Source of the DNA: Lytechinus pictus
Lineage: Eukaryota
DNA length: 64,000 bases
Assembly: GCF_037042905.1 (NCBI RefSeq)
Contig: NC_087247.1
Coordinates: 5,394,001-5,458,000, forward strand
Direction: 5' to 3'
This document shows, one piece after another, positions 4,027 to 32,200 of the stretch (the stretch's first letter is position 1; each line of letters opens with the position of its first letter). The position numbers and the translations under genes were made by a program. The notes beneath the pieces were generated by a model. The model was not told the DNA's origin and did not search any database. It was given only the letters and a program-made list of their open reading frames with translations.

Positions 4027-4298
4027 GGTTCCGTCTTACAAAGAGTTGCGATTGATCCGATCAACCACAACTATGGAAAGCCAGCAACATTAACATGTAA
4101 AATGCATGTTTGTTCAAAATATGTGGAAGATCTGATGGATATTCATGCACTAATTGTTTTCTTGAAAATTCAGTGTGCTTCTCTTTGCTTACAAAGGACA
4201 TTGTGCACACTTCGTGTAGAATGAAAATTATGACATTATGGATTTCCCATATTATAGAGGTTGATCGGATCAATCATAACTCTTTGTAAGACGGGGCC
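4027..4298. mobile_element. PIF/Harbinger-like MITE
   Basis: About 38-bp TIRs (CCGTCTTACAAAGAGTT..GATTGATCCGATCAACC) flanked by CAG/CTG. Confidence 0.75.
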
Positions 4299-5035
4299 CT
4301 GTTTTATCACACCCAAAACACAACCAAAATAAACTGACTTAAAAATACACTAGAAAATGCAAACTTTCAATTCATTGTATACAATGAAAATAATTTATTT
4401 ACATGTATATATTCAACTGGCACCACAAAGCACTCCTAAGTAGAATTGGATTGAGACTGTCCATCCTCTATAATCCGAAATCTTCCTTCGTTGTATATAA
4501 TGCCAGATACATTATTCATTTAATTAATTGACACCACCAATACCAATAAGTTATATAAGAAATGACAAGGACATTTTTCATTGATTGTATATATATATAA
4601 TGGAAATGCTTTATTTGTATGTTTTTTATCAATTAGCACCCTAAAGAATTTTTGAAACGAAGTGTTATTAAAGCTCTCCAGCCACTCTAAATAATTAAAT
4701 AAAATTATATTAAGACCTCTATGCATTGTATATTATGCTTTTTATTTATTTAAGGCCGAAGCACCTTCTAAACAAAATTATCTTACAAATGCCCAACCAA
4801 TCTATATAATAACATATATTATGTCTCCATTCATTGTATATTTAATTAATTTGCACCCCAAAACAACTTCTGAAATTAAATAACTTGACCAACAGATAAG
4901 TTCGCCTTTCACTATATATAAAAAAAATGCTTTAATTACTAGGCATATCAATGTTGTATTGTATTTGTGTTACAGGCGTATCCCGCCACAAGATTTGCTT
5001 TTGGGGAATTAGGCCTTCTTCTGTTAACAATTCTT

Positions 5036-5233: not shown

Positions 5234-5582
5234 AAGATTTTGGAGATTCGTTCAATAAAATTGATCATTAATGGCGGATAATTATGTCATTTTATAGAAA
5301 TTGCTCTTAGATCTATTATCAGAGAACAAAAGAAAAAGAAAACTACTAAAAACCTGTACCTCAATTCATACGTTAAACCTCAAAATTAGAAGAGTTTTTT
5401 TTTTCAATGAACGTTATCTTCACCTACGGTTTAAATAGAGACAGAAATAAATATATTATTTACAAACTAAAATAACAAACAAACAAACAAACGATTAAGC
5501 AAAAACAAACACAATATGGATGGGTCCATGAATTATTTCAAGTAGGCAACTCGTCGGCCATGATGGTGGATATAAGTCGATA

Positions 5583-8500
5583 TCAAGCGAAAGCGCCCAG
5601 TGTCAGATCATCTGTAGAAAAAATAAGCGAAGTATAAGAAATACAGAAGTGATTAATTCGATAAGTAAGCATACCAATTCCACAAGCTACTTCGTTGAAA
5701 TGTTTTGGTTATTTTGGTAAAATCATCACGGAAAACTAAAGCATCAAACATCATTTCCTATTTAAACGTTAACTGCTTTATTTCAAATTAAGAGTGCACA
5801 TACATTTACTGTTCACCTTGGTTTAAAGCTCTCTTAACAAATGCCAGAAGCTTTACGCATTCGTGCATGATTGAAGTCACATCATATACATAATAATAAT
5901 ATATAGCATTTATGAGGCGCCGATTATCTAGTTGCCTATTCGAGAGCACGCTAGATATTACTCTGGCTATAGCTCCAGCTGCTCCAGGCGCTTGGTGCAT
6001 TCAAGGAATAAATCCTGCCGGGTACCCATTCACCTTAACTGGGTTGAGTGCAGCACAACGTGGGTAAATTTCTCGCTGAAGGAAAGCACGCCATGGCTAC
6101 GAATCGAACCCACGTCCATCTGATTGAAAGTCAAGAGTCCTCTTACAGCTCGTACATACAGCTCGTACATGCAATGAATGCCGACAGAATGTAGAGTGGC
6201 CCGTTCTCTTTTTTCTGATGGAGGCCTATACCCCCGTAGTTTTGTTAATTATTGGTGTTCCTTTCAGAATAGCAGGTCAGACTACTTAAGCATTTCCTTA
6301 CGCGACGCTCTTATGAAACATACGTTTGAGTGTACTACTCACCATTGTCGTACTGGGTGCATCGTCCGGCGGCGTCACGATGTATGCACCCAGAAGCCCT
6401 TTGCACACCGCTAGTACCATGGTGAATGCAACGTCCAGTAGCATCTAGCTGGGTACAGCCACCTGTTGGGGCATATTGGATACAACGTCCACTGGCATCC
6501 TGGGTGGTACATCCGACAGCCGGAACCTGTTGAACACAACGTCCGTTGGCATCGCGTTGGGTGCAACCACCAGTTGGTGTATGCTGGACACAACGTCCAC
6601 TGGCATCGCGTTGGGTACATCCACCTGTTGGAGCATTTTGAACACAACGTCCACTGGCATCGCGTTGGGTGCAACCACCAGTTGGGGCATGTTGGACACA
6701 ACGGCCACTAGCATCACGTCTAGGGCACGTTCCCCCATCGGTCGGGAACACGCCTGGGGCACGCGGATATGCAGGAGCAGCGGGTGCATATGGAGAGCCT
6801 TGATGATAAGAGTCATCTCCGTAACCTGGATAAGATGGAGCATAAGGTCCAGTCGGTGGAGCATATGGAGACTGTGGGGCATGAGGAGCGTGTGGGGTAT
6901 TTGGTACGTGAGGTGCCTGAGGGGCATTTGGAACATGTGGAGTATGTGGGGCATGCGGCATTTGTGGAGCATGAGGAACTTCCGGGGCATATGGGGTCTG
7001 TGGCAGTTGTGGCGCATGCGGAGTGCGTGGCACACTCGGGGCCTGTGGTGCATGTGGAATTTGGGGGACCCGTGGTGCATTTGGCATTTGGGGGACCCGT
7101 GGTGCATTTGGCATTTGGGGGACCCGTGGGACACTTGGGGCAGATGGTGTGTATGGTGGCAGTTGGGGTGGTGGGGCACGTGGTGAACTTGGAGCTGGTG
7201 GAGCTGGTGCTCGAGGAAAAAGGGGAGGAGCTAAAACGGGGCTCCTTGGGGCAGGTGCACGTGGGCGTGATGGAATTGCTGCTCCTGGAAAGACTGGGAC
7301 ACCCGCAGAAGTCCCTGGTATTACGACACCAGTTGACGTACCACTCCCTGTGCTCCCATCTGTTCCGCCAGTAGCATCAACACCTACTTCTGTGCCATAT
7401 TCTTCCTCACTGCTGTCTTCATCACTACCGTATTCGTATTCTCCATCTGCTGCGTTTTCATATTCCGTAGTGGTAACATCTACATCCGAGATAGGTGCAT
7501 TGGCGGGGGCAACAGGCTGAACAACAGAAACTCCATCCGTTCCATCTGTGCCATCAGTTCCGTCAGTAGTATCAACGCCGGTACCCTCATATTCGTACTC
7601 TTCGCTGCTGCCACTATCGCTGTAACCACCATTTGCAGAGTTACTCAGATCGTATTCAGTAACTGTTACCTCAACATCGGCGTTGACACCTGGTACAGGG
7701 GCATATGCAGGTCCTCCCGGGAGAGGAGCTCGTGGTGGCACAATGGGAGCTCTTGCCGGGGGTAGTGGAGCCTGTGGAAAAGGTGCACGTGGTACCACAG
7801 GAGGGCTTGGAGCGTATGGCTGTCTTGGCGAAAGTGGTACATTTGGAACTGGTGCTCTTGGTACTGCGGGAGCACTTGGATAATATGGCGCTCTTGGTAC
7901 AGGAGGACTCGGAGCACGAGGTACTTGGCGGAACGTTTTATCGCATGATCCTTTGTGTTGTACTGAGACTGAAACGCCCGATTTTACGGAATCGTCATCG
8001 AGATCACATTCATTGTGATACGTGTGTCCGTTTGAACCGCAGACCGCTCCAGATCTGCTGTCACATGAGTCCCTTCGAGCTATGCAGAAAAACAAGACAA
8101 TATTTGATTTGCATATGAGGTACTTGTATGCGGTAATAATCTATTAAACTAAATATAACATGCCGCATACTGCTGTCCTTTGCTTTCTCCTACTATTGAT
8201 AATAGTTTCATATAATTTAATTCAATAACCTTTTGAAAGTCCTTCTGGACAAAAGTCCTCATTTAAACGTAATCTTATTTTGTAAACATTCTATAAATAT
8301 TGTAGTTGATAATCATTTCCTTGCTCCTATTCCGTACAGCTCGTTCTATACTTTGTATCAAGATGATATCCTTCGGGTATGAAGGTGTGCTGAAGCTTTA
8401 GACATGTTAAATTTAAACGTGTAATTTGATTGTAATTGTTTTATTCTGATGTTTACTATTTGTAAACTGATGAATCACGCATGAAGTAAATAGATTAATA

Positions 8501-8889
8501 GATTGATGAAAACAAATTAAATAATAATTGATTGTAATACAAAAACAAATTACACCAAGTAGGGTATTAAACCTTTATGCTTATTCGGTGGTGATTTTGT
8601 CCGTTTTATTAAAATCCAATATAAACACCTTTCAGGCTAGGAAATTGACCAAAATATAAGGTTTTCTTCTTTAAGGTCTCTGATACACAATGACTACATT
8701 CTTTATTTGATATATTACAAATCCAGTTCATGCATACGTATTGTGTATAACCACCCCAGTTTTGAATAGGCATACTTCTAAAGGCCTCAGAAGTCAAATA
8801 TTTTCAATTTAAATCAACTTACTTCTTGGCATTGCCTGGGTTAGGAGAGCTAGTGACAGGAGACATATTGCTGACTTTATCAGCTTCAT
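5583..8889 (-). CDS. g1: secreted Pro/Ala-rich acidic matrix protein with N-terminal 4-Cys Kazal-like domain and 7 C-terminal C-x8-C repeats (~610 aa)
   Basis: Exons 8889-8823 (MKLIKSAICLLSLALLTQAMPR, signal peptide, donor GTAAGT), 8079-6343 (TRRDSCDSRSGAVCGSNGHTYHNECDL...HKGSC; PRAP blocks; SSEEYEY; acceptor ctgcatag, donor GTGAGT) and 5611-5583 (DDLTLGAFA*, acceptor tttctacag). All phase 1 and in frame. Confidence 0.88.
5890..6140 (-). mobile_element. tRNA-derived SINE in g1 last intron
   Basis: B-box GGTTCGATTC on the minus strand; core GTGCTGCACTCAACCCAG..GGTGAATGGGTACCCGGCAGGA shared with copies at 27215 and 58795; (TAT)n tail. Confidence 0.75.
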
Positions 8890-13001: not shown

Positions 13002-15099
13002 CTATCGTTTTCCAGACACTCCTCCGGAACATGCTTGACCAGAAGGATCATGGTTGCAACTTCCTCCACTGGGGGCATATACAGGACCTCCTCCTGGTGC
13101 TCCTGGTCCTGCTGGTCCTCCTGGGGCATAAGGGCGAGCTGGAGCGTGTGGTGCTGGAATCCTTTGCCCAGGTGCATTAGGTCTAGGTGCTCTTGGTCCA
13201 GGTAGGGGAGCACGTGGCCCTCCTGCAGGTGCTCGGGGCCGAGTTGATGGAGCACGCGGTCCTCCAATGGGTACACTGGGCCTGGGTACAGGAGCTTGGG
13301 ATCCAGGTGCAGGAGCAAATGGTCCTACAGGTCCCCGTGGAGCAGATGGACGCGGGCCCGGGGCATATGGACGGCCGGATACACGCGGTCCGGTTGGTGC
13401 ACGGGGCCCGCCCGGAGCTCTTGGACTGCCTGGAGCACGTGGACTACCTGGGACACGTGGACTACCTGGAGCACGAGGCGAACCAGGGCGAGGAGCACGT
13501 GAACCTCCACGACTACCACCAATCCCATCAGCTCCGACAGCCCCATCAGTCCCGCCATCTCCACCAGCCCCATCAGCTCCACCAGTACCGTCTCCAGCAT
13601 CAGCACCATCAACACCATCTGCGCCATCAATATCACCAGAACCGTAGTTATAGTACTCTTCACCACTACCACTGCTTTCGTCACTGCCGCTTGAACCTTC
13701 ACCTTCGTAATCTCCGTAGTCAGCATCAACTTCACCATCGTAATCACCAACGTCTCCTCCATCTCCACCATCCCCACCGTCACTTGGGGAAACGGGTGCA
13801 AATCTTGTTTCGGGAACTACTGGTGCGGCTGGTGCAGCGGGGACAGGTGCAGCCGGTCTTGGTGCAACTGGGGCATATGCAGGAGCTCTCGGAGGCTGTG
13901 GTCTTGGTGCAGCGGGTACGTATGTTGGAGCACGGGGCATCGGTGGAGCAGGAGCCCGAGGAGCTTGGGCATCTGACTGCTGATCTGAACTTCCACCAGC
14001 ATCGTTCCCGTCTTGAGTAAATGGACCACTACCTCCAGGGGGTCCCGGTGCGAATCCAGGCATACCTGGAGCATGTGGGGCATGGCTCGGAGGAAATGGA
14101 GCATTTGGATAGTATTGTGGGGAATTTGGCTGGTATCCTGGAGCAAATGGCACACCTGGTGCATGTGCTGGGGCAGATGGTGCATGAGGTTGTTGGGGTG
14201 GTGGGGCGTTAGGAGCTGACGGATAAGGGCCTGGAGCAGGAGCTCTAGGCGGTTGATAGCCTGGGTGTCCTGGAGTGGGAGCTCTAGGTGGTTGATTTCC
14301 TGGATAGCCTGGTGCAGGAGCTCTAGCTGGAGGATAGCCTGGTGCGTGTCCCGGTGCTGGAGCACTAGCAGGAGCCCCTCCTCCCCATGATTGGCGGTCA
14401 GCACCACAAGCGGCACCGGGTTTCCCCAGGTCGCACGAATCTCTTGGAACTGAAAGAAAACGGGCAATCAAATGAAGATAGTAAAGTAGATGTGGCCGGC
14501 TACATTCTAGACGCGTAAGCTTTTTATGGCACAACGAGAAATCAATTTGTTTTATGCTCTTTATTTGTATTCATTCCAACTTGTAAAATCATATTCACAT
14601 CGACTAAGAAAAATAAGTTACACTTGCAGATAAAAATACATATGTACAAAGCAGAGGCTGGACCTGGTTTAGGTGCAGCACTATTATGGATATATTTTTT
14701 TTTTCTGAAGGGACTATTGTCATGTCTTGGATAAGAATAAATAACCCTTCGAGTGAAAAGTGAGAGTCAAAACCACAAGACCATTTCGCTCTCACACCAT
14801 CATATTGAAAATGAATAATTTATATATACCGTATACCACAACTAAAAAAGCTATCAATTATTGATATTGGTTACATATCAATAATATAATAATAATTATA
14901 AAGTACGTTATAAAAGCATTTTGTCGCAAATAACTAAAATGAATTACCAACTTGGATTTAAAAAATTGCAAGGAACTATCATAAAAGTGTAAATCATATG
15001 ACTAATGCAATGAAACTCACATCTAGGAGACGCCAAAGAGGAAACACTCAGCGATAAAATACATGACAATATAGCGACAGTCGCCCTCTGCGTCCTCAT
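13002..15099 (-). CDS. g2: secreted Pro/Ala/Gly-rich acidic matrix protein with truncated Kazal remnant (~508 aa)
   Basis: Exons 15099-15021 (MRTQRATVAILSCILSLSVSSLASPR, donor GTGAGT) and 14449-13002 (FPRDSCDLGKPGAACGADRQSW...; acidic DYGDYEGEGSSGSDESSGSGEEYY; ends SCNHDPSGQACSGGVSGKR*; acceptor ttctttcag). Confidence 0.88.
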
Positions 15100-15506
15100 G
15101 ATGAACTAGTGCCTGCATAAAAATACGAACCAATGTGAAATTAATGTCAAGTCAATCAAAATGTTTTGAAGCATTTATTGCAGGATCAATTCATGGCAGA
15201 GAGTGTGCTACAAAACTAAAATATAAACTCATGGCGAAATTTAAATCCGGGTTAGAAAGACGGTCTTCAAGAAAATACATTGTTTTATCATAAAATTTCA
15301 ATAGATAATGTTAAAAAAAAAATGAAATACTGTAAATCATTAAATATTGTTTATGTGACACGAGTGCAAGAGACAAATATCCAATAGACTTACACGTGTT
15401 GTACAGTTTTCAGAATACAATTACTCTCTGGTATATTTCGCCGACGCTTCTTCCTCCCGAAATGCCCGGAATGGAAAATGTTGTCTTCTCTATCTGAGCC
15501 CAGAAT

Positions 15507-15516
15507 GTATATATAC
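15507..15516 (-). promoter_or_regulatory. Putative TATA box of g2
   Basis: GTATATATAC about 115 nt upstream of a GTAAGT donor (15393) closing a non-coding first exon. Confidence 0.5.
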
Positions 15517-16569
15517 CCTCTGAGATGTGTATTAAAATAATCATCAATTGCTCATCCACAAGGAATAATAGCAAGAAAAATTGAAATAAGTTTGAGAGCG
15601 AGAGAGAAACAAAGAAATGCCAAGGAAGGGGACCACGTGTTTGCAGCGGAAGCTGCCTGTTGTTCACGGTTATTGTTATGACAATCTATTTTTCACTGTG
15701 AACAGTAGCAACCTCGATGGCAGCTTCATGGTCAATACCGCAACTGCTTCTTACAACTTATTATTTTTAACATCCAGTTGGTTTATTTTTAATGTCTTTA
15801 TCTCTTCAATGGCGTGAAAAAAATCAAGAAAATAGCTTGATACATCCCAGCTTTAGGACAATGCAAGGAGTTAATGATATCTAAATTGTTCCCTCATAGA
15901 TCATCATCGAAACTAAGACAGATGCTACGCGATGAGGAGCAATGTCAGAATCGGCCTGTTGCTAATATTCTTTTTTAAAACCATATGCGCCTGAGGTAAT
16001 TAATATTAATTCATCATTTGACCAATCAAACTCTTCAATTCGAGATTCAACTTGATGTGAATGATAATGTATGTTGAAAATCATACTTTCATAACATTTA
16101 TTTACGCTTCATTGCCAATCTTTATTGAAAAATTCATTATCTTTATAGATCTATGAAAATAGATTTTATACATTACAAACACTGAAAAACAATTTGTTTC
16201 AAGATGCCCATTATTCACTTCTTGAGGTGTCTTGTTTGTCTAAACGTTTATTTTGTTTATCGTCCTCTTCTTTGTTTCTTTGCAATTTGATGACAATTTA
16301 TACTTTGCCACTATATACAATCATTGAGGTGTCTTTTCTCTGTTGCAACGATAATTCAACAACTACGTTAAAAAAGGTGGAATCCCACTCACTTTTTTAG
16401 TCTTATAAAGTTTTGATAGAGCAAAGCACAATTAAGACCACTGTGAAGCAAAAAGATGGAGGCGCAATGGTATTTGAAAGGAGGGATGCTAGATGAACTA
16501 TATAAAAATGACGTAAGAATAGAGGTAAATACCAAGACTTAGAATACTATTTTATGTCACTCTTTATTT

Positions 16570-17386
16570 GAAGAGTTTAGTTGCAAAAGGGCTTAGGTCC
16601 ACTTTGGACCATTCTGAGAAAAACCATGTTTTTTATTCTCACTTACTGCAATATTCTTATGAGAAACTAAATTGTCATGATGTACTACCCTATAATGTGA
16701 ACATAAAATTGGGTATAAAAGAAATCTACCTGTCTTCAATTTTTTCTATAAATTCTTTTAAAAATTATCATTGTGGACCTAAGCCCTTTTGCAAGTAAAC
16801 TGAAATGAATCCAATCTATTTTGATTAAAAAAGTGATTTTTATTTGCCACTTTTTTCACGTTTTCATGTAAATTTCAAATTTTCTTTGTTTTCATCAAAG
16901 CGACTAAAAATGTAAAGGTTTTGAGACAGAAAACAATAAAATTTATGAACAATGGACCTAACCCCTTTTGACAAATGAGCTCTTCAGAAGAGTTTGTTTG
17001 CAAAAGGGGTTAGGTCCACTCCAAGAAAATATTTTTTTTATTCTCCTATATTGTATATTCTTATGCGAAACAAAATTGTCAAGATTCCCTACCATGACAA
17101 CATAAAATTGGGTATAAAAGAAATCTTCCTTTATTCATATTTTTTTTAATATTCTTTTCCAAAAAATTCGGTGTGGACCTAATCCCTTTTGCAACTAAAC
17201 TGAAATGGACCTAACCCCTTTTGAAAAAAAAAGTGATTTTTCTTTGCCATTTTTGATCACTTTTAAATAGGAATTTCAACTTTTCTTTGGTATCATCTTA
17301 TAGAGCTACTAAAAATCTATACATTGAGACCAAAAAATCAAATTTGATGAAAAATGGACCTAACCCCTTTTGCAAGTGAGGTCTTC
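16570..17386. mobile_element. Head-to-tail dimer of a ~410-bp TIR element (possibly Sola-type)
   Basis: Units 16570-16985 and 16987-17386, each GAAGAG..TTGCAAAAGGG..TTAGGTCCA ... TGGACCTAACCCCTTTTG..CTTC. ATTT flanks both outer ends. Confidence 0.8.
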
Positions 17387-19413
17387 ATTTGTTTCCCGTT
17401 GTGTTGCCTCTTTTCTTTTTTATCATCCTTTTCCCAATATTTGAAGAAAAAAAATCGCATCATGCACGTGGGTGCATGGGTGGGGTCCCAAGTCCCTTCC
17501 AACGGTTTAGTTTCCGACCATTGTTCTTGTTCTTGATTTGTTTATTGCAATAGTAGGTATCATCATTTTTTATTCATTTTATGAAAGAGTTTGATTTTAC
17601 ATGTTAAAAATTCATAATTATGAAAATGGCGTTTATTGAATTTCATAACCAACAGACATTTTCATTTAATTCATAAATAACCGATGAAAGGCATATCTGA
17701 GTCGATCATTATTCACGTAAGATGTCAAAGACAACTTCTTATTTATCTCAAAACCTTTTGCTGATTATTTGATATTATATCTCATTATGTAAATTTAAAA
17801 CAGTATTCGTTTGAAGAACTCGTTTGGACAACTAAAACAAAAATCGGCAATAATAAGTTTCCTTCAGTTTCAAAATCCTCCTGCAGAAAGAACGTTTAAA
17901 ATTGTTTGAACAGCTGATCACTGAATGCTCGTTGTGGAAATTTGAGAAGAGTGGTGATTATCGTTATTTTGAGCTTTCGTGAAGGATATAACTTGTCCGC
18001 ACTTGACAAATGCAAATACAGGAATGAAAAGTAAGTTCATTATGTGCAAACCCTTCAGACATCATAGAGTAACAATTGTAATTACATGTGACTTAAGTGT
18101 ATTCTGATTGGCTGAAAGTCACGTGATTATTCGGACCATTGTGATTCGCATTAAAATTGTTCCCTCCAGCCCTCCATTTCACTCCTGGACCCCCCCCCCC
18201 TCTCCGCGCGTCATAGCTGAGTCAAACTTTTTTTTCTCTCTTTTTTTTTTCTTTCTATTCAAGCTCAATATTCGTTTTACTCTCGTCTGCGTTTAACTTA
18301 ATGAAAATCAATTACAAGTGCAGTGTTGCTTCGTACTTCGATCGTCTATCATCGGCATGCATTTCTTGTATTTTTTTCAGTGACAACCTGTGATGGTGAA
18401 TCACCAAATTGTTCTGGACCATTTTATAAAGATGTTCGTAATTTATTGTATAAATGACCTTTAGTACAAAATACTTGTGACACCGTGTTGTGCTAATTGA
18501 TTTGCCCCTATCATGCCTATGTAGCTGACTTAGCACCTAAGAACACGCTCGAGTCGTAAGCGTAGTCGTGAGTTACTTTACAGTTTTATGAAACACCCAC
18601 CTGGAAACTACTTTCGATTCAGACCTGTCGGAGAACCACGAACAACACTTGCCTAGAGCATGACTGATAAGTTAGCTAGTGCGATTTTCTTCTGAAGTAT
18701 TTATGTTATTGATTTAGAGTTAAGGTGGCTATGTTTTCATTTCTCACATATTCAATTTTTTTCCCATTCTGTGGCCATTCTAGTTACGTGCATACGCATT
18801 AATTGGGACTTTTCGTAAACCTCACGGACGATAATATTAGGGTCCTCTAACACAAAAGTTGACGCTTAATCATACACTTGAATTTTAAGATTGATTGTAC
18901 ATTATAGTCAATAGAATCAAACGTAGAAACTGCTCTACAATCAATGCTAAGCTTTGTGTTACAGGGGGGTTACAGGCCCTACAGATCTCCTGCGACACCC
19001 GCACCATACATGCATGTACATTACGACTGATAGTCAACATCGTATAGATTATGACATATGGATAAGAAAGTGGTTTTTCAAACAAATCGAGTACATATTG
19101 AGTGAGGAAAAGTTTGAATTAAGGCTTAGATATAGATCATTATAGTCCATCGAATCGATATTGCATTTAATGTGGATTATTGGTGGATCACTGGCAATTG
19201 ATTCCCTTTGTCAGATCACCTCTCCAGCCGAAACCATTTCGCATGCGTTGATATGTACACAGCATGCAGTAGGCCAAATTCGTCTGAACTCAGTCGATTT
19301 TGCGGGGTTTTTTCTTTTGTTTACTCCTTCTACACAAACGATATGCCTCTAGCACAAAATGTAATGGGCATTACGTTTTACTTTCCGCAGAAATGGGGGA
19401 TTAGATTCAAATT

Positions 19414-19712
19414 CCGGGGGGACCACTTCCATTGATAAGTGGATACCAGGCGCTACCATGGGGTTTCGAAAATCACCCTAAACAAGGGAAGCAAGTCTTT
19501 TCCAGATTATGAAAATGCATCTCTTAACAAGTATTTAGCTTGTAAAACCCTACAAGTATTGAAAATATATCCCCATTTTCAGTATTTTAAACATCGTTTT
19601 TGACACCCTTATAACGTTACATAGGCATATAACGTAACGTTCTTGCCCACTCTTTGCCTTTTTACGCGTGGTCGCGCCTGGTATCCACTCTTCAATGGAA
19701 GTGGGCCCCCCG
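19414..19712. mobile_element. MITE with ~40-bp TIRs
   Basis: CCGGGGGG.CCACTTCCATTGA..AGTGGATACCAGGCGC at the left end and its reverse complement at the right end. Confidence 0.8.
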
Positions 19713-21886
19713 GGCGGCCTTTCTCGAGCTCTTGGCGGAATCAAATGTGGCTCTGGAAAGTCGTCCTAAATCGGATATATCGCTGTTACCATAGTAATAA
19801 CCAGAATTTTGCACACGGAACGCAGATTGAATGTTTCCGTTCCAAATGCGAAACGAAAAAAAATCTCATGTCACACAATTTACATTGCAGGACAGAGTTT
19901 TACGACCATGACGGCGGGCCCAAAAGTCTCTTCCAAAATCAACTACCTTTGTAAATAAGCGTACACGTTCTCGAACGAAAGGTCGGGAAAATCCACACGC
20001 GCACCGCAAACCCAAAGACAAACACAAGTCCACAAACATGGGTCCGCACTCAAAAATATTGAAAAAAACCCACCATGAATAGAGGCGAGATCTACCTACA
20101 TCCCCATCCCTCAAAGTTGTGCCATAACCATCTCTTCACACTCGTCTATTCATTATTTCCCTTCCTGTGCTCCCCTCTATTTTCTTCGGAGGCGTTAAAG
20201 TACCATCGACACCTTTTATGTCGACTTTACGATATAACGTTGTCGTCAAGTTGTCATACACAATTTTCTATGTCGACTTCGCGAGATTTTTTATCTCGCC
20301 ATCTCTACAAGTCGATTGCACTTTAGAGCTTCTGCATGTCTAGCACAGAAACGCCCTCACACTCACCAAAACACACAATAACACTTTATTTATTCTTATT
20401 TGGATATTTGTCCCTTTATCTCTCTCTCTCTCTCCCCCTCCCTTTCTTTTCATTCTCAGTTGATGTCACCCCATTTTCTGTCTCCATTCTCTCATCTAAT
20501 CGCTCTTGACGGTTTGTCTGGGTTTTTTTTTTTTTAAAGCATGCTTTACAAGGAATATCTTGGGGTATCTTTTCCCGTTTTATTATCTCTCTGATGCCCT
20601 TTGGTACAATATTTTTGTAATCATTTATCCTCTTGGTTCTCTTTGTACTCGCCTCTTTCATTCAAAAAATATCTGACATTCAAAGAAATTAAAGTCATAA
20701 TAAACGATTAGTTCGAATATAAATTAAATATATAATTCCACACAATCAACAGAAAAAAATCAAATAAAACAATTCAAATAAATAAAAGTACTAAACCACA
20801 AGCAGAATACATTATCATACAAGATCAATGCGGAAAATGAATATTAACAAAACATAATGGTAGTCACTCAATAAACTAAACAACGAAATCATAACGAAAA
20901 TTAGTTTATGATGATTTTCAATAAATAAAGATAAAAAAAAACGATGCAAAAATAAGTTATTATTAATGAATCACAAATGCCTATTATAATGCATGTTAAT
21001 ATATAGATGGTACGCCTCAATTATATGACAGAACTGGAACAATCTTTAGAATATATGTATACAGTGTATTAACACGATCCGATCAATTCGGGTTCGAAAA
21101 AATATATTACATGAGGTCACTTAATTCCAAGAACTTAAGTGACCTTAAGAATGAATAGACAAGTGTATACAACTACTAATAATGATAAACAGCTTTACCG
21201 TAGTGTGTGCATTTTTCAACAATGGAAATCAAATAAAACCCATTAACTGAAATTAAATTTTCGGGAAAAAAACCCATACAATTCTAATTGAATAATTTAT
21301 GCATTTTTCCCTATTCATTCAAATGTAAACATAAAAAGAGGGTGCATCACAAAAAACATGATGACTTATACCAAATTTATGTACGTTATATCCTGCAGAT
21401 CAATATGAAGACAAAGCCATAAGCTCCAAGGAGTCGAAAGTTTGTTGGTGATTGCACTTCGAACCTGATACAAAAGAAAAAGAAATATAATTAAGAATAT
21501 TAGAGAAAAATCAATGTCCATAAAGATGAAGAAATTCAGGTTTTTTTTCATCTTAAAAGACAGGGCAACTGTAACGTATTTAGTGATAGAAAATAACTAT
21601 TTGCCCAAATCCATAAAATAAAAATGAAGATAATCAATTACGTAAAAGCAAAAAAATCATGATTTTATTAATATTATTGATGAAACATAAATGTTATTGC
21701 ATCTGAACCTTTCGAATTTCATGGGGTTATATTAAAAAGTGTAATTTTGCAGAAAGGAACATTCTCATTAGTAGGAGTAGGGGTAAGCTGTAAACACATC
21801 AGTCACTAATTATTATTTTTAGCTTAATGTAAGAGGAAAATAATCTTGTTACTGTTGATAACTCACCTCGATTATGTTCTGCATGT

Positions 21887-24219
21887 CTAGTCATCTAAAA
21901 TAAAGGGGGAGAGAAAATAAAACAAATCAGAAATCAAGCACGAGCGTGCATCAAGCATTAAATATGAAATAATATATTTTTAATTAAATGATGAGACAGA
22001 TTTTCGTCTTACAAGGTAATTTTTTTTCGTTCTTTTTGATGTATTTCTTTACTTTTAATCTAGATTTTCAAACTGACAAAAATTCCTCGAAAGTTAAAAA
22101 ATTATATATTCCCCTTCGACGATTAATAGTAGACAGTGATTAATTGATTGAAATGGTTATACGGGATCATACCTTCATATCTAGCTTTTCATGACAGTGC
22201 ATTGTCGGACATTGTGAGGGCAAGATGAGATTTATATATTAGTTTTGATAGATGCCAATATATTATCATGATTGCATTGATTCATAATGTTGTATTTGTT
22301 TACAATAGTGTTTCTAATAGGCTAAGAAAAATCACCTTCACTTGAATTGTTAGGATCGTTCGCACCACCATCGGTGCAAATGAAATCAGAAACACCATCA
22401 TTACAAGTGCCAGTGCCTGCATCTCCACCTGGGACATTTGCGGTTCCACCATCGGCTCCAGCGGGGACGAAACCAGGAGTTCCAGCGGGTGAAAATCCAG
22501 GAACTATTCCAGGTGCTCCTCCAGGTGCTCCACCAGGTGCTCCGCCAGGTGCTCTTGGCAAAGCACGACCCACACTAGGGACATATGGTCGACTTGGAGC
22601 ATTGGCACGGCGGCGACCACCAGGGGCAGAATATCCAGGACTAGGAGCGAATGATCCAGAGGAAGGAGCAGCTGCAGGGTGTGGAGCACGAGGTAGGGAT
22701 GGGGCACGGGGAAGTGCACGTGGTCTGCCTGGAGCACGTGCAACTCCTACACTTCCACGTGAAGATGGAACACCAGATGTCGTGCCAGGAACACCAGCAA
22801 CTGTCGCAGTTCCGGTCCCAGCATTCCCATCTGCGCCGTCAGCGCCATCAAAACCATCGGCACCGTCAACTCCTTCTGTACCATCAGCACCCTCTGCACC
22901 ATCATATCCTTCGTAATCGTAAGCCTCTTCACTACTGCCACTGCCATCTCCGCCGCCACTTCCGCTTCCTGCACCAGCACCTGCACCGTCACCTGCGCCG
23001 GCTCCTCCTGCTCCAGAATCACCATCAAAATCACCACCAGCATCTGCGGCGAAGCCGGCGAAGCCACCACTACCCACTACTCCTGGAGCATAACCAACGC
23101 CTGGGATTGGAGCATTAGGTGCAAATGCAGGACCAGAAGGAGCGGGTGCAGCAGCAGGTCTTGGTGCGGCTGGTCTCGGTGCAGCGGGTCTTGGTGCCGA
23201 AGGTGTAGGAGCACGGGCAGGGGGAGCACGGGCTGGAGGTGCACGGGCCGGTGGGGCAGCAGGCGATGGAGCATATCCGGGAGCTGAAGGAGCTGCAGGT
23301 GCAGGCGCATACTGAGGTGTTGAGTCATGTGATCCCGAAGTTCCTCCACCTTGATCATATTGCGGACCAGATGGCGCTGCATATCCAGGTTGATATCCGG
23401 GTGCCACAGGGGCATGTGCAGGTGGGGCTGGGGCTGCAGGGCGTGGGACTGGAGCTGCAGGGCGTGGAACAGGGGCAGATGGACGTGGAGCAGGAGCTGG
23501 AGCCCTTGGATGTGGATGAACAGGCGCATTTGGAGCTGCAGCTGGACCATGACCTCCAACTCCGCCTGCTCCCCCAGATCCACCTGGAGCATAGGGGGCT
23601 GATTGTGTCCCCCCTGATGACGATCGGCAAGATCCGTAGTGAGAAACCGATACGTCTTGTCCAGTCCTAGATGCTTCTTTTTCCATCTCGCATTCGTTAT
23701 TGTATGATTTTCCATTGGAGCCACAGACGTTTCTTGTGTCACTCTCGTCACAAGAATCCCTTGGAACTACATAAAACACAAGACATAAATACGGCATCTT
23801 AGAAATTATATACAAAACAGCCACCATACACAAGAAGTTTATGATAAACAATTCAAACTTACGCTTTCCTTAAAACATCATTTTTGGAGCCCACTCTACA
23901 TTTATGCCCCACTTGACAAGCAAATCGCACATAATACCGTAATCCAACATTTATTATTTATTTTACACAATATAGTATTACTGATTACAGAAAAAATATA
24001 AACTTATCATCTTATGAAAAAATACGATTACATGAGACGTTTGCAATAATTTTGTCGACCTGGCTATTCTCTAAAATACATTTATATCTCTATCATAAAT
24101 GGCAATTTAAATCAAAGGCGATGTATGATATATATATACTCACTTCTGGGTGCACCAATTGAAACGGCAATAAGAGAGAATAGGAGGGCCAGGATAACTT
24201 GATGTTTTATAATTTCCAT
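21887..24219 (-). CDS. g3: secreted Pro/Ala/Gly-rich acidic matrix protein with N-terminal 4-Cys Kazal-like domain (~504 aa)
   Basis: Exons 24219-24144 (MEIIKHQVILALLFSLIAVSIGAPR, donor GTGAGT), 23766-22336 (IPRDSCDESDTRNVCGSNGKSYNNECEM...HYGSC; SSEEAYDY; donor GTGATT) and 21894-21887 (DD*, strong pyrimidine-tract acceptor). If the last intron is retained the protein ends GDFS* at 22322. Confidence 0.87.
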
Positions 24220-24330
24220 GTTGACACTGTTATGCAGCTTTACAAAATGTTAGAATTCGATTCTGCTCAAGCTTTCACTGCTTGTGGAGTTTGCTGAAAG
24301 CGAAATGGTGGAGAAGAACTATCGCCCCCA

Positions 24331-24340
24331 ATATTTATAG
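24331..24340 (-). promoter_or_regulatory. Putative TATA box of g3
   Basis: CTATAAATAT on the minus strand about 110 nt upstream of ATG 24219. Confidence 0.55.
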
Positions 24341-25929
24341 AATCGGCATATCTGCTATTATTTATTAACTAATGATGCAACATTTTTTTTTTTTACATGA
24401 AACCCTCAACCACATCAAAACAACAATGACTGAACTTGAGATAATCATAATGTTAATCGGTCTTGGTTGATATCAACACAGTAGCAACCTTAAAATATAG
24501 ACAATGACTAATATAAAGATTTTTGTGCACATTCTTCGATTTCCCCCGATTATCCTCGAATTATACATTATAGATAAAGAAATAGTTTCTTCGACAATAA
24601 GAAAAGAGTGGGATTAACACTTGATGATGCATAGTTTCATTCTTAGAAATGATTCTTTTTGTAGAAGGGGGGGGGGGGTCGGGAAGCTCAATGCCGGCAG
24701 CTGTATTGCGCAAGTAAAAGTGCCTCACCACACACATGACACATGATTCGATATCTGTAGAATCTTAAAATTCTGCATGAATTCTTACGATTATCAATCA
24801 TCCCCCTTAGGATAAGACAGAGGCATATCTCGTTAGGATTTAGATTTAGGGCCGGGGTAAACTTAACTCATAACAGTTTGCTTTCAACTTTCAACAAAAT
24901 GGTCTAGTTGTTAAACAACAACATTTGATATTATTTTTATTATATCATTGATTTTGTATATTCACAATAATAATAAGGAGTGTGTATGCCTACCATCTAT
25001 TCATAATGATCATCTTGTAAGAGGGGAAAATGCATCTTTTATTATTTCAACAACCGTCCAGGTATCTGGATTATTCGTTAATTACTCTAATATGCAGGAT
25101 CATGAAAAATGTTTTGTTTTGTTTTCATATGGATGTAGCGCTACCATTTTCATCCGAATTGTCCACCATATGACCTTAGTTTGTAAGAATTAAATTATTA
25201 ATTTCTTCTCTAAAATTGCTTACTTACTATTTTGTATTTTTTCAAAAGAAAGTGGAGTAAGTTCAGTGGAAAAGTTACCCCTTATCGTCCCCTTCTTTCT
25301 TTCGTCACCCTCGTTCACTACTTGATCTTATTAATACAGTAGCAATGTTAAATCAAGGTCTCCAAATCTGTCATAATCTGCATACGATTAAATGCATTAT
25401 CAATGTCAAAAATGGCAAGTAGAAAAAATATGTCAAATAATTATGAAAATTATGAATATCATAGTTGGAATGCCCTTTTAAAGATGGATTTGTACAAGTC
25501 TTCATGAAATCATTTTAAGTGTTTGTGAATTTATGATGAACAATTATTTTTTTTCTCATTTGTTTTAGTATAAATATATATTTTATTTTATATCATTTTA
25601 TTTTATTTTAATTTTATTTATCTATTTATTAATATATTCATTTATTTATGCAATTACTTATTTATGTTATTATTATTATTTTTTTTTTTGGGGGGGGGGG
25701 TCAGAAAAATATAGGATAACTAGTTATGAAGACAAGGGTAATATGTTGGGTTAATGCAGACAACAATTTTTTTTTTCTTGTATAAAACAGAATGTAGGTA
25801 ACATTCCTTAGATACATACATATTTTTCAAAAAACTGTTTTTATTCAATAAGGCAGTCTAATTCTTTTTAAAAGGTAGCATGAATCAAATATCAAGTAAA
25901 TGCAATTGACTCCTTTAGGTATCAATACT

Positions 25930-26080
25930 TCTAATGAATTTTTTTGTGTGTACAGACGTTTTTCAATTACATAGGATTATTTACTACTGGGACCGACTAG
26001 CGTTTAACGTCACCATCCGAAAGACGTGACCTTGGATTGAATCTCGAACCTCCGCACAAATTAGTGTATAACTTATCCAT
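25930..26080 (-). mobile_element. SINE fragment with Deu/Nin-like central motif
   Basis: Minus strand reads GGTTCGAG (B-box-like) then GTCTTTCGGATGGTGACGTTAAAC..GGTCCC, resembling the conserved deuterostome SINE core (recognised from memory). Confidence 0.45.
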
Positions 26081-27214: not shown

Positions 27215-27380
27215 ATATTACTACCCCTGGCTGTAGCTCAAGCCGTCATACTTGTGTAACCATTCAACGAATAAAATATATCGGGTACCCATTTACCTTA
27301 CCTGGGTTAAGTGCAACATATTGTGGATAATTCTTGCAGAAGGAAATTGACACTCACCTGGAGTAGGATTCGACCCTCAC
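27215..27380 (-). mobile_element. tRNA-derived SINE (degenerate copy)
   Basis: CGGGTACCCATTTACCTTACCTGGGTTAAGTGCAACA matches the 5890-6140 copy; B-box GGTCGAATCC on the minus strand. Confidence 0.65.
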
Positions 27381-29270: not shown

Positions 29271-32200
29271 CTAGTCATCTGTATGATATTGAATAAATGC
29301 AAAAGAATTTTTTTTTTTTTTACGATAATATTATTATACTATTTCGAGAAAGGCACGTGCGGAGAGAGGAAATCAAAATTTTTATTAGACTATTTAGGGT
29401 TAATGATTATAATCATTTTATAATGTTTGATATTGATGCAATTTACTGTATATAAGAAAATAAAATAGGAACATAAATTCTTCGAATCTATATGGATTCA
29501 TTAACCCCTTCAAATGAGATTGGTCATCAATTAATGTTGTTTTCAAAAGGGATTTAAAGGCTAGAAGACTTACCATTGTCATAAGCATTGTTTGATGTGC
29601 AACTGTTGCCAGGTGCGTTTTGAGAACAGCTAGCAGTGTCATATCTGAAACCTGGAGCGCCCGGAGCTGCCTGAGCTACTCCCGGTGCTCGTGGTAGAGC
29701 CGGAGATGCACGCCCAAATGAAGGGGCATACGGTCGACGTGGTGTATTGGGGATGAATGGGCGAGGAACTCGTGGAGGTGTTCCTGGCCGAGGTGGAAGC
29801 CCTGGAGGAGGAACACCAGGTCTACCAGGAACAGGCGGTAAATTGGAAACACCAGGTCCGGTAGGAGCACCGGCGATACCAGGTCCACTTGCAGCACCAG
29901 ATACTCCACCTGCAGTGCCAGTACCAGCATCAGCACCAGCGGGAGCTTCTGTTCCCTCCTCTACATCTGTTCCATCATTACCGTCATAGTCGTAGCTCTC
30001 CTCGCTGCTGTCACTGTCATCTCCATCAGTACTAGCTTCTCCACCTTCAGCTCCAGTACCGTCTACGCCATCTGCGTAATTGCCGAATGCTCCAGTTCCT
30101 GGAGCGCTTGGAGCGTATCCAACCCCTGGTGCGTTTGGAGCATACCCAACTCCTGGTCCGACTGGAGCGTATCCGACTCCTGGCCGAGAGGGGGCGAATT
30201 GTCGAGGAGATTGTGGCACAAATCCTGGAGCAGCAGGTCTTGGTGGTAAGGGGGCGAATCCCGGTGCCCTTGGTGCTGGTGGTAAGGGTGCATAACCAGG
30301 TGCTCCTGGAGAGGGTGCGTACCCTTGGGTATCATGCTCGTATCCCGACGTTCCTCCTGCGTATCCTTGATCCGGGTTGAATGATGTGGGATTATGTGGA
30401 GCTGGCGCCCTGTGAGGTGGAACTGGTGCTCTAGGAGCATGTGGAGCTGGAGCTCTAGCTGGAGGACGAGGAGCAGGTGCTCTCGCTCCGGGTTGGTATC
30501 CCGGGCGACTTGGTGCACGAGGAGCGGCTCGCCCAGACGAGCGGCAGTATTCGTAGTTGGTTACCTGTATATTCTGTCGAGTAATAGCATCTTCTTCTTC
30601 CAAGTCACAAAGGTCGTTATAAATCTTGCCGTTTGTGCCGCAGACCGGTCCCGAGGCACCCCTGTCACATGAGTCTCTCGGTGCTAAGGTAGAAAGAGAC
30701 AACGTAAAAAAAAATTATATAACAAAATAAAACAAAAAATGAAGATAACTGCCACACAAAACATTCGTTCTCGAAAGGAAGTAAAATGTGCAAAAGAGCA
30801 GTCAGAAAAATTAGGGAGATGCACATCCATTCAAAAATAAAATTTCATTTTCGTGAACGTAATGTAATTCATCGCCTTACAATTCCTATCCCCCAAACAA
30901 AGACATCAAAACGTATCTAGAAGCGTTCAAAGGGGAAAAAACACATTTATACAGTGCGTATCAAAAATAGTTTACACTTAGAAAAAATCCTGTAAAATTA
31001 TATATTTGTAATATCCTGAAGATTTTTCCACATTTTAACATTGGTACAGATCCACTTAAAGTGATTGGTTAACATTAGTTTGACTTTAAAAAATCTGAGC
31101 TAGAAGGTCACACTTGTCACCTGTGTCTGTGATATGTTACAAAAATAAAGCCCAGAAAAAATTGCGTTCGAAAATAATTATTTAGTGCTTCAAAAATTGA
31201 AATATAAAGTGACCGAAAACACCATCTTGATTTCATCCCATACACTTATGTGTACTATTTAGGCGTCTATAAGACGCCTATTTACAAAATCGGGGTTTGG
31301 CTTGTAGTTTTAGCTTTTCATTCTCAATAATGGTTGTTTTCAGGGTTTATTAGTTCTAATACATGCACTTGTACACATGTTTCATCTTGGTTTGAGAATT
31401 TTTTAAATCGGCTTCTCACAAAGTTAAACAATACCTTTAAGCAAATGACGATATAACTGTCAAAAAATATATCCGCCTGAATGAGCGCCACTTACTTTTG
31501 AAAAGTTAGTGAAAAATTATTTGCGCAAAACTCTGAAATAGTTATGCGAATAAAAGTAGACCTTAATCATGAAGAACACGAGGAATTTTGCTAGTAAAAT
31601 TGATTTGAAGATATCTTTTACCCTTTTCAACCTGTTTTCTTGGCCAAAACACTTCGAAGAGTGCATTGCGCCTCACCCCACTCCCCCACACACCGAGGCC
31701 ATCGTGACGATGTTTGCTTTACACGGAGATGTGACATAAAATGGCTTAGGCTTCATTTTCATTTTGTTAATCATTGTCAAGCTTGGGAAAAGTGTGGAGA
31801 AACAAGTATTAAATGAAAAATGAAAGGTAAACCCACTTTAAATGATACAAACTTAGTGAAAAAATGCTGGAGATGTCAGATATAAACTTTTGTTCAGATT
31901 CAGTTATGTCCTCAGGTCCAGCTGGCACAAAAAGGGTAAAGGTTGTGCTTACTTAGTGTTGAAATTTCAATTTGGGTCATAAAATTGTTACAAAATGCTT
32001 GAATGTATCCGTTTAATTTCAATTGACTAAAAGTGTAAGGGAAATGGATGAGAAATGTTTCGCAGGGTAAGTTTGATTTCGCCCTTTCCCCTTTACACAG
32101 CATGAAAACAAGCATTTCTGCGCAAACAGATTTCTGCGTGCTTTACAAAAATGGACAGTGCTCACTCAAGTGTAACATTCTGTCTAAACTTTAACTTGCA

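What the first reader, a model, noticed from the sequence alone, without database searches (positions are those of the whole stretch)
6346..6736. Unrecognised 18-aa C-x8-C repeat: seven copies in g1, one copy in g2, g3 and g4
Seen: g1 ends with seven units of consensus GGCTQRDASGRCVQxAPT (54-nt period, central units nearly identical in DNA). At the equivalent position g2 has SCNHDPSGQAC, g3 TCNDGVSDFIC and g4 SCSQNAPGNSC, all C-x8-C. I do not recognise this as a named domain. Inference: a disulfide-closed beta-hairpin (DASG turn) recently amplified in g1, acting as a multivalent cross-linking or binding module.
Basis: partly seen in the sequence, partly recalled or inferred. Interest (0 to 1): 0.7.

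Follow-up and report, generated by a model that had tools for sequence, protein, structure and literature searches.

The report
Cysteine-hairpin repeat in urchin tooth-matrix protein
The repeat is real and expressed: it is an unnamed, old and selectively maintained array of 14 evenly spaced cysteines at the tail of a sea-urchin tooth-matrix protein whose family is already known, and it most likely serves as a disulfide-based cross-linking or docking tail.

Summary
g1 (minus strand) carries seven C-x8-C units at window 6344-6733. g2, g3 and g4 each carry one. No Pfam, NCBIfam, PDB or ESM Atlas family matches the repeat.

- The cysteines sit every 9 residues, in 12 consecutive gaps of 8. The 18-aa unit is therefore two alternating loops, A (TQRDASGR) and B (VQNAPTGG).
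- Central units are 78-85% identical in DNA, not nearly identical. Between units pS is about 0.60 and pN about 0.19, so the array is old and under purifying selection, not recent.
- g1 does not end at the ORF stop. An RNA contig splices 6343 to 5611 and adds nine residues.
- In S. purpuratus the g2 and g3 loops are C-x9-C. The Cys pair is conserved; the spacing is not.

[quoted passage not shown] 2008. g1 is the orthologue of Glean3:17589. g2-g4 were fused in the Glean3:17588 model.

A low-confidence AlphaFold2 model gives one hairpin per A loop. The nearest sequence look-alikes are YD/RHS repeats and unnamed bacterial C-x3-D-x2-G-x-C repeats. These are resemblances, not membership.

Disulfide connectivity and function are untested. 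A cross-linking tail is my best guess. The scan has not reported this repeat on other DNA.

The parts
8823..8889 (-). g1 exon 1: start codon and 22-aa signal peptide (ending AMPR), closing in phase 1 before a GTAAGT donor
   Evidence: Scan for ATG, a hydrophobic core and a phase-1 donor. Joining it to exon 2 keeps the frame. g2, g3 and g4 have equivalent exons at 15021-15099, 24144-24219 and 32334-32403.
6343..8079 (-). g1 exon 2: Kazal-like domain, Ala/Pro-rich block, acidic Gly/Asp/Ser-Glu block, second Ala/Pro/Gln-rich block and the Cys repeat array
   Evidence: ORF 6335..8095. The acceptor is ...TGCATAG|CT at 8080/8079. The donor after 6343 is shown by an RNA contig.
7943..8077 (-). Kazal-like domain with only four Cys (the Cys1-Cys5 pair is absent)
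   Evidence: Pfam Kazal_2 E=1.7e-9 and Kazal_1 E=1.8e-7 over residues 7-51. Cys positions.
6344..6733 (-). Cys repeat array: 14 Cys and seven C-x8-C units. Units lie at 6680-6733, 6626-6679, 6572-6625, 6518-6571, 6464-6517, 6410-6463 and 6341-6394, with a 5-aa insertion at 6395-6409.
   Evidence: AlphaFold2 hairpin pattern. Tiled by RNA contigs.
5612..6342 (-). g1 intron 2 (GTGAGT ... polypyrimidine tract ... CAG)
   Evidence: Run X2, contig record 12: its positions 310 and 311 join window 5611 to 6343 (table 8). Splice-site sequences.
5583..5611 (-). g1 exon 3, coding part: the true C-terminus ...CTQYDN-DDLTLGAFA followed by stop. The 3' UTR continues to at least 5289.
13029..13058 (-). g2 single loop CNHDPSGQAC. 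The S. purpuratus orthologue has CNNNGPSGQAC, which is C-x9-C.
   Evidence: Mann et al. 2008, Additional file 7.
22376..22405 (-). g3 single loop CNDGVSDFIC. The S. purpuratus orthologue has CSEGVSADYGC, which is C-x9-C.
29599..29628 (-). g4 single loop CSQNAPGNSC. The S. purpuratus orthologue has CTQNAPGNTC, which is C-x8-C. It is followed by ...YDN and a GTAAGT donor, as in g1.

Best explanation
g1 is a spliced, expressed gene for a secreted protein of 610 aa. It is the orthologue of S. purpuratus Glean3:17589, the most abundant member of the published sea-urchin tooth-matrix group with a Kazal domain, Ala/Pro-rich blocks and acidic Gly-rich blocks.

Its C-terminal 130 aa are an old expansion of the short Cys-bracketed loop that closes the main exon of the paralogues g2-g4. 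The expansion is under purifying selection.

The array is a 9-residue Cys periodicity with two alternating loop types. Loop A (x-Q-R-D-A-S-G-R) is a YD-like D-x-x-G hairpin turn. Loop B (V-Q-x-x-P-T-G-G) is a more variable Pro/Gly linker.

Inferred mechanism: the rest of the protein is predicted to be disordered, and the array gives it a compact tail of about seven mini-hairpins carrying 14 cysteines. After secretion these form disulfides within the tail, between chains, or both. g1 would then act as a multivalent node that ties matrix proteins into the insoluble organic matrix of the tooth. The single-pair paralogues could make only one such link.

Shown here: the repeat, its expression and splicing, the family identity, and selection on the sequence. 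Inferred: the hairpin fold (weak model support), disulfide formation and the cross-linking role.
For: - Repeat and Cys periodicity.
- Expression and the 6343>5611 splice.
- Full gene model with a signal-peptide exon, 18 Cys in the mature chain (4 in the Kazal domain, 14 in the array).
- Family identity: Mann et al. 2008 (PMC2614417) describe the same architecture. The 17589 peptides TYHNECDVEDDSSR, SGVSISVNHK and TTFQVPR match g1 apart from a few substitutions each. The 17588 sequence contains orthologues of g4, g3 and g2, each with its Cys pair.
- Selection: pS 0.60, pN 0.19, ratio 0.32 over all codons, 0.23 for loop A plus both Cys, 0.41 for loop B. All 14 Cys are retained.
- Hairpins: AlphaFold2 places strands at each Cys, turns at DASGR, and pLDDT below 50 in the APTGG linkers. 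The unrelated bacterial look-alike family gives the same pattern.
- phmmer hits include confirmed RHS/YD repeat proteins that share RDxxGR.
- The array is unique within this 812-Mb genome.
Against: - No experiment or model shows any disulfide.
- In the AlphaFold2 strand register the two Cys of a unit are not cross-strand neighbours. The model is of low confidence (pLDDT 57.9, pTM 0.22).
- No peptide from such an array is listed for S. purpuratus 17589. That model appears to be only about 445 aa long (129 peptide residues at 29% coverage), so the array may be missing or unannotated there.
- No orthologue could be retrieved to test conservation.
- The RNA runs that hold g1 are of unknown tissue, so tooth expression in this species is assumed from the S. 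purpuratus proteome.
- The pN/pS pairs among repeat units are not independent, and gene conversion could distort them.
Confidence: 0.5

Rival explanations
1. The array is a multivalent, non-covalent binding module. Intramolecular disulfides only stiffen each mini-hairpin. The repeated Asp/Ser/Arg-bearing turns bind a periodic ligand, either a calcite or amorphous-carbonate surface or another matrix protein or glycan, much as YD or furin-like hairpin stacks present binding surfaces.
For: Selection is strongest on loop A residues (Q-R-D-A-S-G-R), not only on the Cys. An even Cys number allows full internal pairing. The weak Foldseek rows are furin-like Cys-rich rods and RHS shells. The family occurs both inside and outside the mineral in S. 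purpuratus.
Against: The structural matches are not significant (best E 0.3). The loop has a net positive charge and only one acidic residue, unlike typical calcite-binding motifs. The acidic Ser/Glu/Asp blocks elsewhere in the protein are better mineral-binding candidates. No partner is known.
Confidence: 0.25
2. The array is a dispensable low-complexity expansion produced by replication slippage or unequal crossing-over, with no specific role beyond being tolerated at the C-terminus of a disordered protein.
For: The whole locus is rich in tandem repeats. The loop sequence and length of the single-copy versions drift between species, x8 versus x9. The S. purpuratus 17589 model may lack the array.
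Against: pN/pS is 0.32 with near-saturated synonymous divergence. All 14 Cys are kept at an exact 9-residue spacing over 12 intervals. The array is expressed and correctly spliced.
Confidence: 0.1
3. The array is a genuine, divergent member of an ancient hairpin-repeat superfamily: YD/RHS or the bacterial EC-x-W-D-P-S-G-E-C type. It would have been inherited or acquired rather than evolved locally.
For: phmmer E-values run from about 1e-3 down to 4e-11 against bacterial repeat proteins and RHS proteins. Identity to the P0014 array is 45% over 69 aa, with the same two-loop 18-19-aa unit.
Against: The Pfam RHS_repeat and Bflower models do not match g1 at E<=10. The E-values are inflated because one 18-aa coincidence is multiplied by the repeats. 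The paralogues g2-g4 and their S. purpuratus orthologues carry a single loop at the homologous exon end, which points to local expansion. There is no trace elsewhere in the genome.
Confidence: 0.1

Closest known systems
[quoted passage not shown]
   Same: Same architecture: signal peptide, Kazal-like domain of about 40 aa, basic AP-rich block, acidic Gly/Asp/Ser-Glu block, then a second AP(Q)-rich block. Same tandem gene cluster. The 17589 peptides match g1. 17588 contains the g4, g3 and g2 orthologues with a Cys pair at each module end.
   Different: The paper does not describe any C-terminal Cys repeat. The S. purpuratus 17589 model seems too short (about 445 aa) to hold a 7-unit array. 17588 is a fusion of genes that here each have their own signal-peptide exon.
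YD / RHS repeats (Pfam PF05593; teneurin and Tc-toxin shells)
   Same: A period of about 18-21 aa. A hairpin with a D-x-x-G-R turn. The hexapeptide RDAAGR of unit 7 is identical to a YD core in P0076. RHS proteins appear among the phmmer hits.
   Different: The Pfam RHS_repeat model does not match. The defining Tyr is mostly absent. YD repeats have no conserved Cys. Seven units are far too few for a shell.
Unnamed bacterial secreted repeat proteins: small TAT/lipoproteins with four EC[VI]xWDPSGEC[VI]xW units (P0008, P0029, P0036, P0042, P0051, P0058, P0068, P0069, P0077) and a Calx-beta protein with CIQYDSSGRCIQYSSSGT units (P0014)
   Same: The same C-x3-D-x2-G-x-C-[VI] signature. In P0014 the same alternation of a DxxGR loop and a Ser/Gly linker, with 45% identity over 69 aa. 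AlphaFold2 gives the same strand-turn-strand pattern.
   Different: They are bacterial and have conserved Trp/Tyr after each Cys, which g1 lacks. No Pfam or NCBIfam family covers them. The resemblance is most likely convergent.
Cnidarian minicollagen cysteine-rich domains (recalled from general knowledge, not tested here)
   Same: Short Cys-rich terminal modules flanking Pro-rich, otherwise extended chains. They polymerise a secreted structural matrix by disulfide exchange. This is the functional analogy behind the cross-linking reading.
   Different: A completely different Cys pattern (C-x3-C series), a different fold and a different lineage. No sequence similarity is claimed.

Membership tests
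Sea-urchin tooth-matrix AP-rich / acidic Gly-rich Kazal protein group (Mann et al. 2008) | N-terminal signal peptide | tested here: met
   A separate exon 1 encodes 22 aa with a hydrophobic core ending AMPR, followed by a phase-1 GTAAGT donor. It joins exon 2 in frame. This is a heuristic prediction; no signal-peptide program was available.
Sea-urchin tooth-matrix AP-rich / acidic Gly-rich Kazal protein group (Mann et al. 2008) | Kazal-like domain of about 40 aa directly after the signal peptide | tested here: met
   Pfam Kazal_2 E=1.7e-9, above the gathering score.
Sea-urchin tooth-matrix AP-rich / acidic Gly-rich Kazal protein group (Mann et al. 2008) | Alternating neutral or basic Ala/Pro-rich blocks and acidic Gly-rich blocks | tested here: met
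   Read directly from the translation. The order of blocks matches the description of Glean3:17589.
Sea-urchin tooth-matrix AP-rich / acidic Gly-rich Kazal protein group (Mann et al. 2008) | Orthology to the published proteins | tested here: met
   MS peptides of 17589 align to g1 with a few substitutions each. The 17588 sequence aligns module by module to g4, g3 and g2.
Sea-urchin tooth-matrix AP-rich / acidic Gly-rich Kazal protein group (Mann et al. 2008) | Presence in the organic matrix of the tooth | not testable with these tools
   Transcripts exist in runs X1 and X2, but the tissue is coded. Two other RNA runs, X4 and X5, show no reads on g1.
RHS / YD repeat (Pfam PF05593) | Match to the family HMM at or above the gathering score | tested here: not met
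   No RHS_repeat hit for g1 at E<=10. The same library scores true RHS proteins at E 1e-32 to 1e-143.
RHS / YD repeat (Pfam PF05593) | Y-D-x-x-G-R-[LIV] core in each repeat | tested here: inconclusive
   D-x-x-G-R is present in all seven units. The Tyr is replaced by Arg, Gln or Leu, and the [LIV] position by Cys.
Beta-flower (Pfam PF21784-6, clan CL0395) | HMM match, and four- to six-fold hairpin petals around a hydrophobic channel | tested here: not met
   No hit for g1. The bacterial look-alike P0008 reaches only E=0.19, 12.6 bits against a cut-off of 25. The models show no barrel at usable confidence. Family definition taken from PMC10584680.
Classical Kazal inhibitor domain (PF00050 / PF07648), for the N-terminal domain only | Six Cys forming the 1-5, 2-4 and 3-6 disulfides | tested here: not met
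   Only four Cys are present in g1, g3 and g4, at the positions corresponding to Cys 2, 3, 4 and 6. g2 keeps two. The HMM match itself is met.

The most novel reading that the evidence does not exclude
The C-x3-D-x2-G-[RE]-C-[VI] unit is an undescribed, recurrent mini-module: a Cys-flanked YD-like hairpin. It would have arisen independently in an echinoid tooth-matrix protein and in several families of bacterial secreted proteins. In g1 its 14 evenly spaced cysteines would make the protein the covalent network node of the sea-urchin tooth organic matrix. This would be a new type of disulfide cross-linking domain in a biomineral.
Probability: 0.25. Interest if true: 0.55.

Novelty: new variant of a known kind. 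Interest (0 to 1): 0.4.

Why it matters
Sea-urchin teeth are a model for hard, self-sharpening biominerals. The AP-rich Kazal proteins are the tooth-specific part of their matrix, and their function is still unknown.

A conserved array of 14 cysteines on the most abundant member offers a concrete, testable handle on how these disordered proteins are fixed in the matrix. The tests are disulfide mapping, deletion of the array, and counting repeat units across species.

The work also corrects the published gene models. Glean3:17588 is a fusion of several genes, and g1 has a third exon. Finally, it flags an unnamed Cys-flanked hairpin motif that recurs in bacterial secreted proteins and could merit a family definition.

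Tried and rejected
- **Family and structure libraries.** Pfam at E<=10 found only the Kazal domain. NCBIfam found nothing relevant. PDB by sequence gave only a chance match, E 0.03, to an aminopeptidase. The ESM Atlas gave no usable hit. Foldseek against the PDB with the g1 model gave a best E of 0.3, which is not meaningful at pLDDT 58.
- **Orthologue searches.** Three homologous-protein searches returned nothing: the g1 repeat region, whole g4, and the g1 Kazal region. The exhaustive HMMER search returned no echinoderm relative. Conservation of the g1 array in other species could therefore not be tested. These blanks say little, because fused or absent gene models may fall outside the length window or the library.
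- **Most of the 78 HMMER hits are artefacts.** They are period-9 tandem-repeat ORFs, for example P0005, P0013, P0047 and P0071. I discarded them.
- **Own-genome hits other than g1** are out-of-frame satellites or unrelated repeats.
- **Conserved terminal exon or flanks among g1-g4.** Protein and DNA comparison of the intergenic regions found only a shared SINE-like element.
- **Beta-flower membership** was considered and rejected.
- **Origin of the loop from the Kazal Cys2-Cys3 loop**, which is also C-x8-C in g2-g4: the registers do not align, so I dropped the idea.
- **Antimicrobial hairpin-peptide precursor.** Rejected, because there are no dibasic processing sites and the units are neither cationic nor amphipathic.
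- **Neighbouring regions.** The 20 kb below the window and two other Kazal hits on the contig hold no further family member with the repeat.
Full report
**1. What is in the sequence**

The finding lies on the minus strand. Tandem Repeats Finder reports a 54-nt array at 6429-6719 (5.4 copies, score 316). The same stretch also gives periods of 108 nt and 27 nt.

The ORF 6335..8095 translates into a Kazal-like head, a Pro/Ala/Val/Arg block, an acidic Gly/Asp/Thr block with Ser-Glu and Tyr clusters, a second Pro/Ala/Gln/His block, and then the Cys repeat.

The Cys positions are separated by 12 consecutive gaps of exactly 8 residues, then 13, then 8. Six are in strict 18-aa register and the seventh follows a 5-aa insertion.

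The spacers between units are also exactly eight residues long. The array is better described as a 9-residue Cys periodicity with two alternating loops. Loop A is T-Q-R-D-A-S-G-R and loop B is V-Q-N/H-A/T-P-T-G-G.

g2, g3 and g4 each carry one C-x8-C pair near the end of their large exon. It is the only Cys pair outside the Kazal region.

**2. Age and selection**

Units 2-4 are 78-85% identical in DNA and the other regular units 56-76%. This is less than 'nearly identical'.

Pooled over the 15 pairs of the six regular units, Nei-Gojobori counts give the following:
- All codons: pS = 0.60, pN = 0.19, ratio 0.32.
- Loop A with both Cys: ratio 0.23.
- Loop B: ratio 0.41.

Units 2 and 3 differ at 6 synonymous but only 2 non-synonymous positions.

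The pairs are not independent and gene conversion could play a part. Even so, the picture is an old expansion whose peptide sequence, loop A and the cysteines above all, has been maintained. It is not a recent amplification.

**3. Gene model and expression**

The ORF stop at 6335-6337 is not the end of the protein. The sequence AAT G|GTGAGT at 6343/6342 is a strong donor.

A 544-nt contig from run X2 (record 12) lies on 6343-6576 and continues without extra letters on 5611-5289 (table 8). The skipped stretch 5612-6342 begins GTGAGT and ends with a polypyrimidine tract and CAG.

The true C-terminus is ...C-T-Q-Y-D-N followed by D-D-L-T-L-G-A-F-A and a stop. Contigs from X1 and X2 tile the whole array (6343-6886) with few mismatches. 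Two other RNA-seq runs, X4 and X5, have no reads on g1.

Upstream, each of g1-g4 has its own signal-peptide exon ending in (A/M/S)-P-R, in phase 1, with a GT[AG]AGT donor:

| Gene | Signal-peptide exon | Start of large exon |
|---|---|---|
| g1 | 8889-8823 | 8079 |
| g2 | 15099-15021 | 14449 |
| g3 | 24219-24144 | 23766 |
| g4 | 32403-32334 | 30683 |

Assembled, g1 encodes 610 aa. The mature chain has 18 Cys, 4 in the Kazal domain and 14 in the array.

**4. What the genes are**

A full-text search led to Mann, Poustka and Mann 2008 (Proteome Sci 6:33, PMC2614417). That paper describes five secreted proteins specific to the S. purpuratus tooth matrix. [quoted passage not shown]

The peptides sequenced for 17589 (TYHNECDVEDDSSR, SGVSISVNHK, TTFQVPR and others) match g1 apart from a few substitutions each. 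The block order described for 17589 is that of g1. g1 is therefore its orthologue, in a different but fairly close species.

Additional file 7 of the paper gives the 17588 sequence. It is a fusion model that contains, in order, orthologues of g4, g3 and g2. The fusion was possible because all the large exons are phase-1 symmetric.

The phosphoproteome paper PMC2830187 confirms 17588 and 17590 as matrix phosphoproteins. Neither paper mentions a C-terminal Cys repeat.

**5.

*Is there a Pfam match?* No. Only the Kazal domain matches at E<=10. NCBIfam, PDB sequences and the ESM Atlas also gave nothing.

*Is the spacing conserved in orthologues?* Only partly:

| Gene | Loop here | Loop in S. purpuratus |
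|---|---|---|
| g4 | C-x8-C | CTQNAPGNTC (C-x8-C) |
| g2 | C-x8-C | CNNNGPSGQAC (C-x9-C) |
| g3 | C-x8-C | CSEGVSADYGC (C-x9-C) |

The Cys pair and its position just before the exon end are conserved. The loop length is not, and in g3 the loop sequence is not either.

The g4 loop resembles loop B of g1 (Q-N-A-P shared, 6 of 10 positions) rather than the DASG loop (3 of 10).

Whether S. purpuratus 17589 has the array could not be settled. Its sequence is only in a figure. Its 10 peptides total 129 residues at a stated 29% coverage, which implies a model of about 445 aa. That is roughly g1 without the array. This is a weak inference, and the old gene model may simply be truncated.

**6. Searches for relatives**

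Three word-indexed searches found nothing. The exhaustive HMMER search of 1.84 billion representatives gave 78 hits at E<=1e-3, none of them echinoderm.

Most hits are meaningless period-9 repeat ORFs. Three groups are informative:
- **Small bacterial TAT/lipoproteins** with four EC[VI]xWDPSGEC[VI]xW units (alignment A1).
- **A bacterial Calx-beta protein, P0014**, with CIQYDSSGRCIQYSSSGT units. It is 45% identical to g1 over 69 aa and has the same two-loop unit.
- **Bona fide RHS/YD repeat proteins and CPAP G-box proteins**. Unit 7 of g1 contains RDAAGR, identical to a YD core.

None of the bacterial proteins has a Pfam or NCBIfam family for the repeat. The weak Bflower hit (E 0.19) does not hold up against the published definition of that fold.

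Two observations argue that the resemblance is convergence on a D-x-x-G hairpin and not shared ancestry. The paralogues carry a single loop at the homologous site. The array is also unique in the 812-Mb genome. The E-values are inflated because one 18-aa coincidence is repeated several times.

**7. Structure**

AlphaFold2 without an alignment gives a poor model overall (pLDDT 57.9, pTM 0.22). Its secondary-structure pattern is regular, however. Four-residue strands start at each Cys, the turns fall on D-A-S-G-R, and confidence drops below 50 in the A-P-T-G-G linkers. The bacterial family, modelled with nine sequences, gives the same pattern (pLDDT 61.6).

In that register the two Cys of a unit are not opposite each other. 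The models therefore do not support a hairpin closed by its own disulfide, although they are too weak to exclude it. Foldseek found nothing significant. The top, non-significant rows are furin-like Cys-rich rods and RHS shells.

**8. Interpretation**

Firmly established:
- The repeat is real, expressed and maintained by selection, and it has no named family.
- It sits at the C-terminus of the orthologue of a known tooth-matrix protein.

Inferred:
- It forms YD-like mini-hairpins.
- Its 14 evenly spaced cysteines make disulfides that fix or polymerise an otherwise disordered protein in the extracellular tooth matrix. On this reading g1 is a multivalent node and the single-pair paralogues are monovalent.

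A non-covalent multivalent binding role is the main rival. A neutral expansion is unlikely given the substitution pattern.

The feature is a new variant within a known protein family and is of moderate interest. Its value lies in giving a testable handle on proteins whose function has been unknown since 2008.

No stretches written N were filled in. The single read-laying run used 6,000 letters, as required.

Noticed in passing
window 13002-30702 (g2, g3, g4) with signal-peptide exons at 15021-15099, 24144-24219 and 32334-32403: The published S. purpuratus model Glean3:17588 (Sp-Hypp_136) joins the large exons of the g4, g3 and g2 orthologues into one protein of 1982 aa. Here each gene has its own signal-peptide exon with a strong phase-1 donor, so the published model is probably a chimera. 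All large exons are phase-1 symmetric, which makes such fusions, or real read-through splicing, easy.
   Followed up: partly
window 42735-43361, minus strand: Two long overlapping minus-strand frames are open. One reads Gly/Asp/Cys-rich (GGGDGGCGKGGCGGG...). The other reads Val/Glu/Ala-rich (VAVMEVVTVADAEKAAAVEAM...). The 'acidic Val-rich motif' reported for the N-terminus of Glean3:17588 corresponds to the second frame. No MS peptide listed in the paper lies in that motif, so which frame is translated remains open.
   Followed up: partly
window 4030-4300, 5990-6130 and 27261-27346: Interspersed repeat elements. Read depth in all RNA runs is enormous at 4030-4300 and 5990-6130, with many chimeric joints at the former. 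The 5990-6130 and 27261-27346 copies are about 80% identical to each other and tRNA-like in part. The 5990-6130 copy sits inside g1 intron 2.
   Followed up: no
window 7542: An RNA contig from run X1 lacks 9 nt here, which is three codons of the Thr-Asp-Gly repeats in the acidic block of g1. This looks like an allelic length polymorphism.
   Followed up: no
window 5289-5611: The spliced contig from run X2 differs from the assembly at 17 bases and 15 gap positions in the 3' UTR, but at only 2 of 234 bases in the coding part. This is consistent with a divergent allele and constraint on the repeat-coding sequence.
   Followed up: no
window 14406-14435 (g2), 23723-23752 (g3), 30640-30669 (g4): The first two Cys of the Kazal-like domain are also spaced C-x8-C in g2-g4, and C-x7-C in g1. 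g2 has lost the rest of the domain. Its mature protein therefore has just two C-x8-C pairs, one at each end.
   Followed up: partly
window 53750-55337, minus strand: Orthologue of Glean3:17587, the family member without a Kazal domain. Its C-terminal ...DGDNGDNGCGDNGDGGTSNGCD... matches the published sequence almost exactly, and its Cys pair is spaced C-x11-C. Short Cys pairs at module ends are thus a family-wide feature with variable spacing.
   Followed up: partly
L017 4570-5442 (G000:C3, about 70 kb before the window): A further family member of the 17590/22278 type. Its Kazal helix is replaced by an Asp run (…CDVDDDDDDTNGNGG…), followed by YAP/HAP-rich repeats. The fetched exon contains no C-terminal Cys array.
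   Followed up: partly
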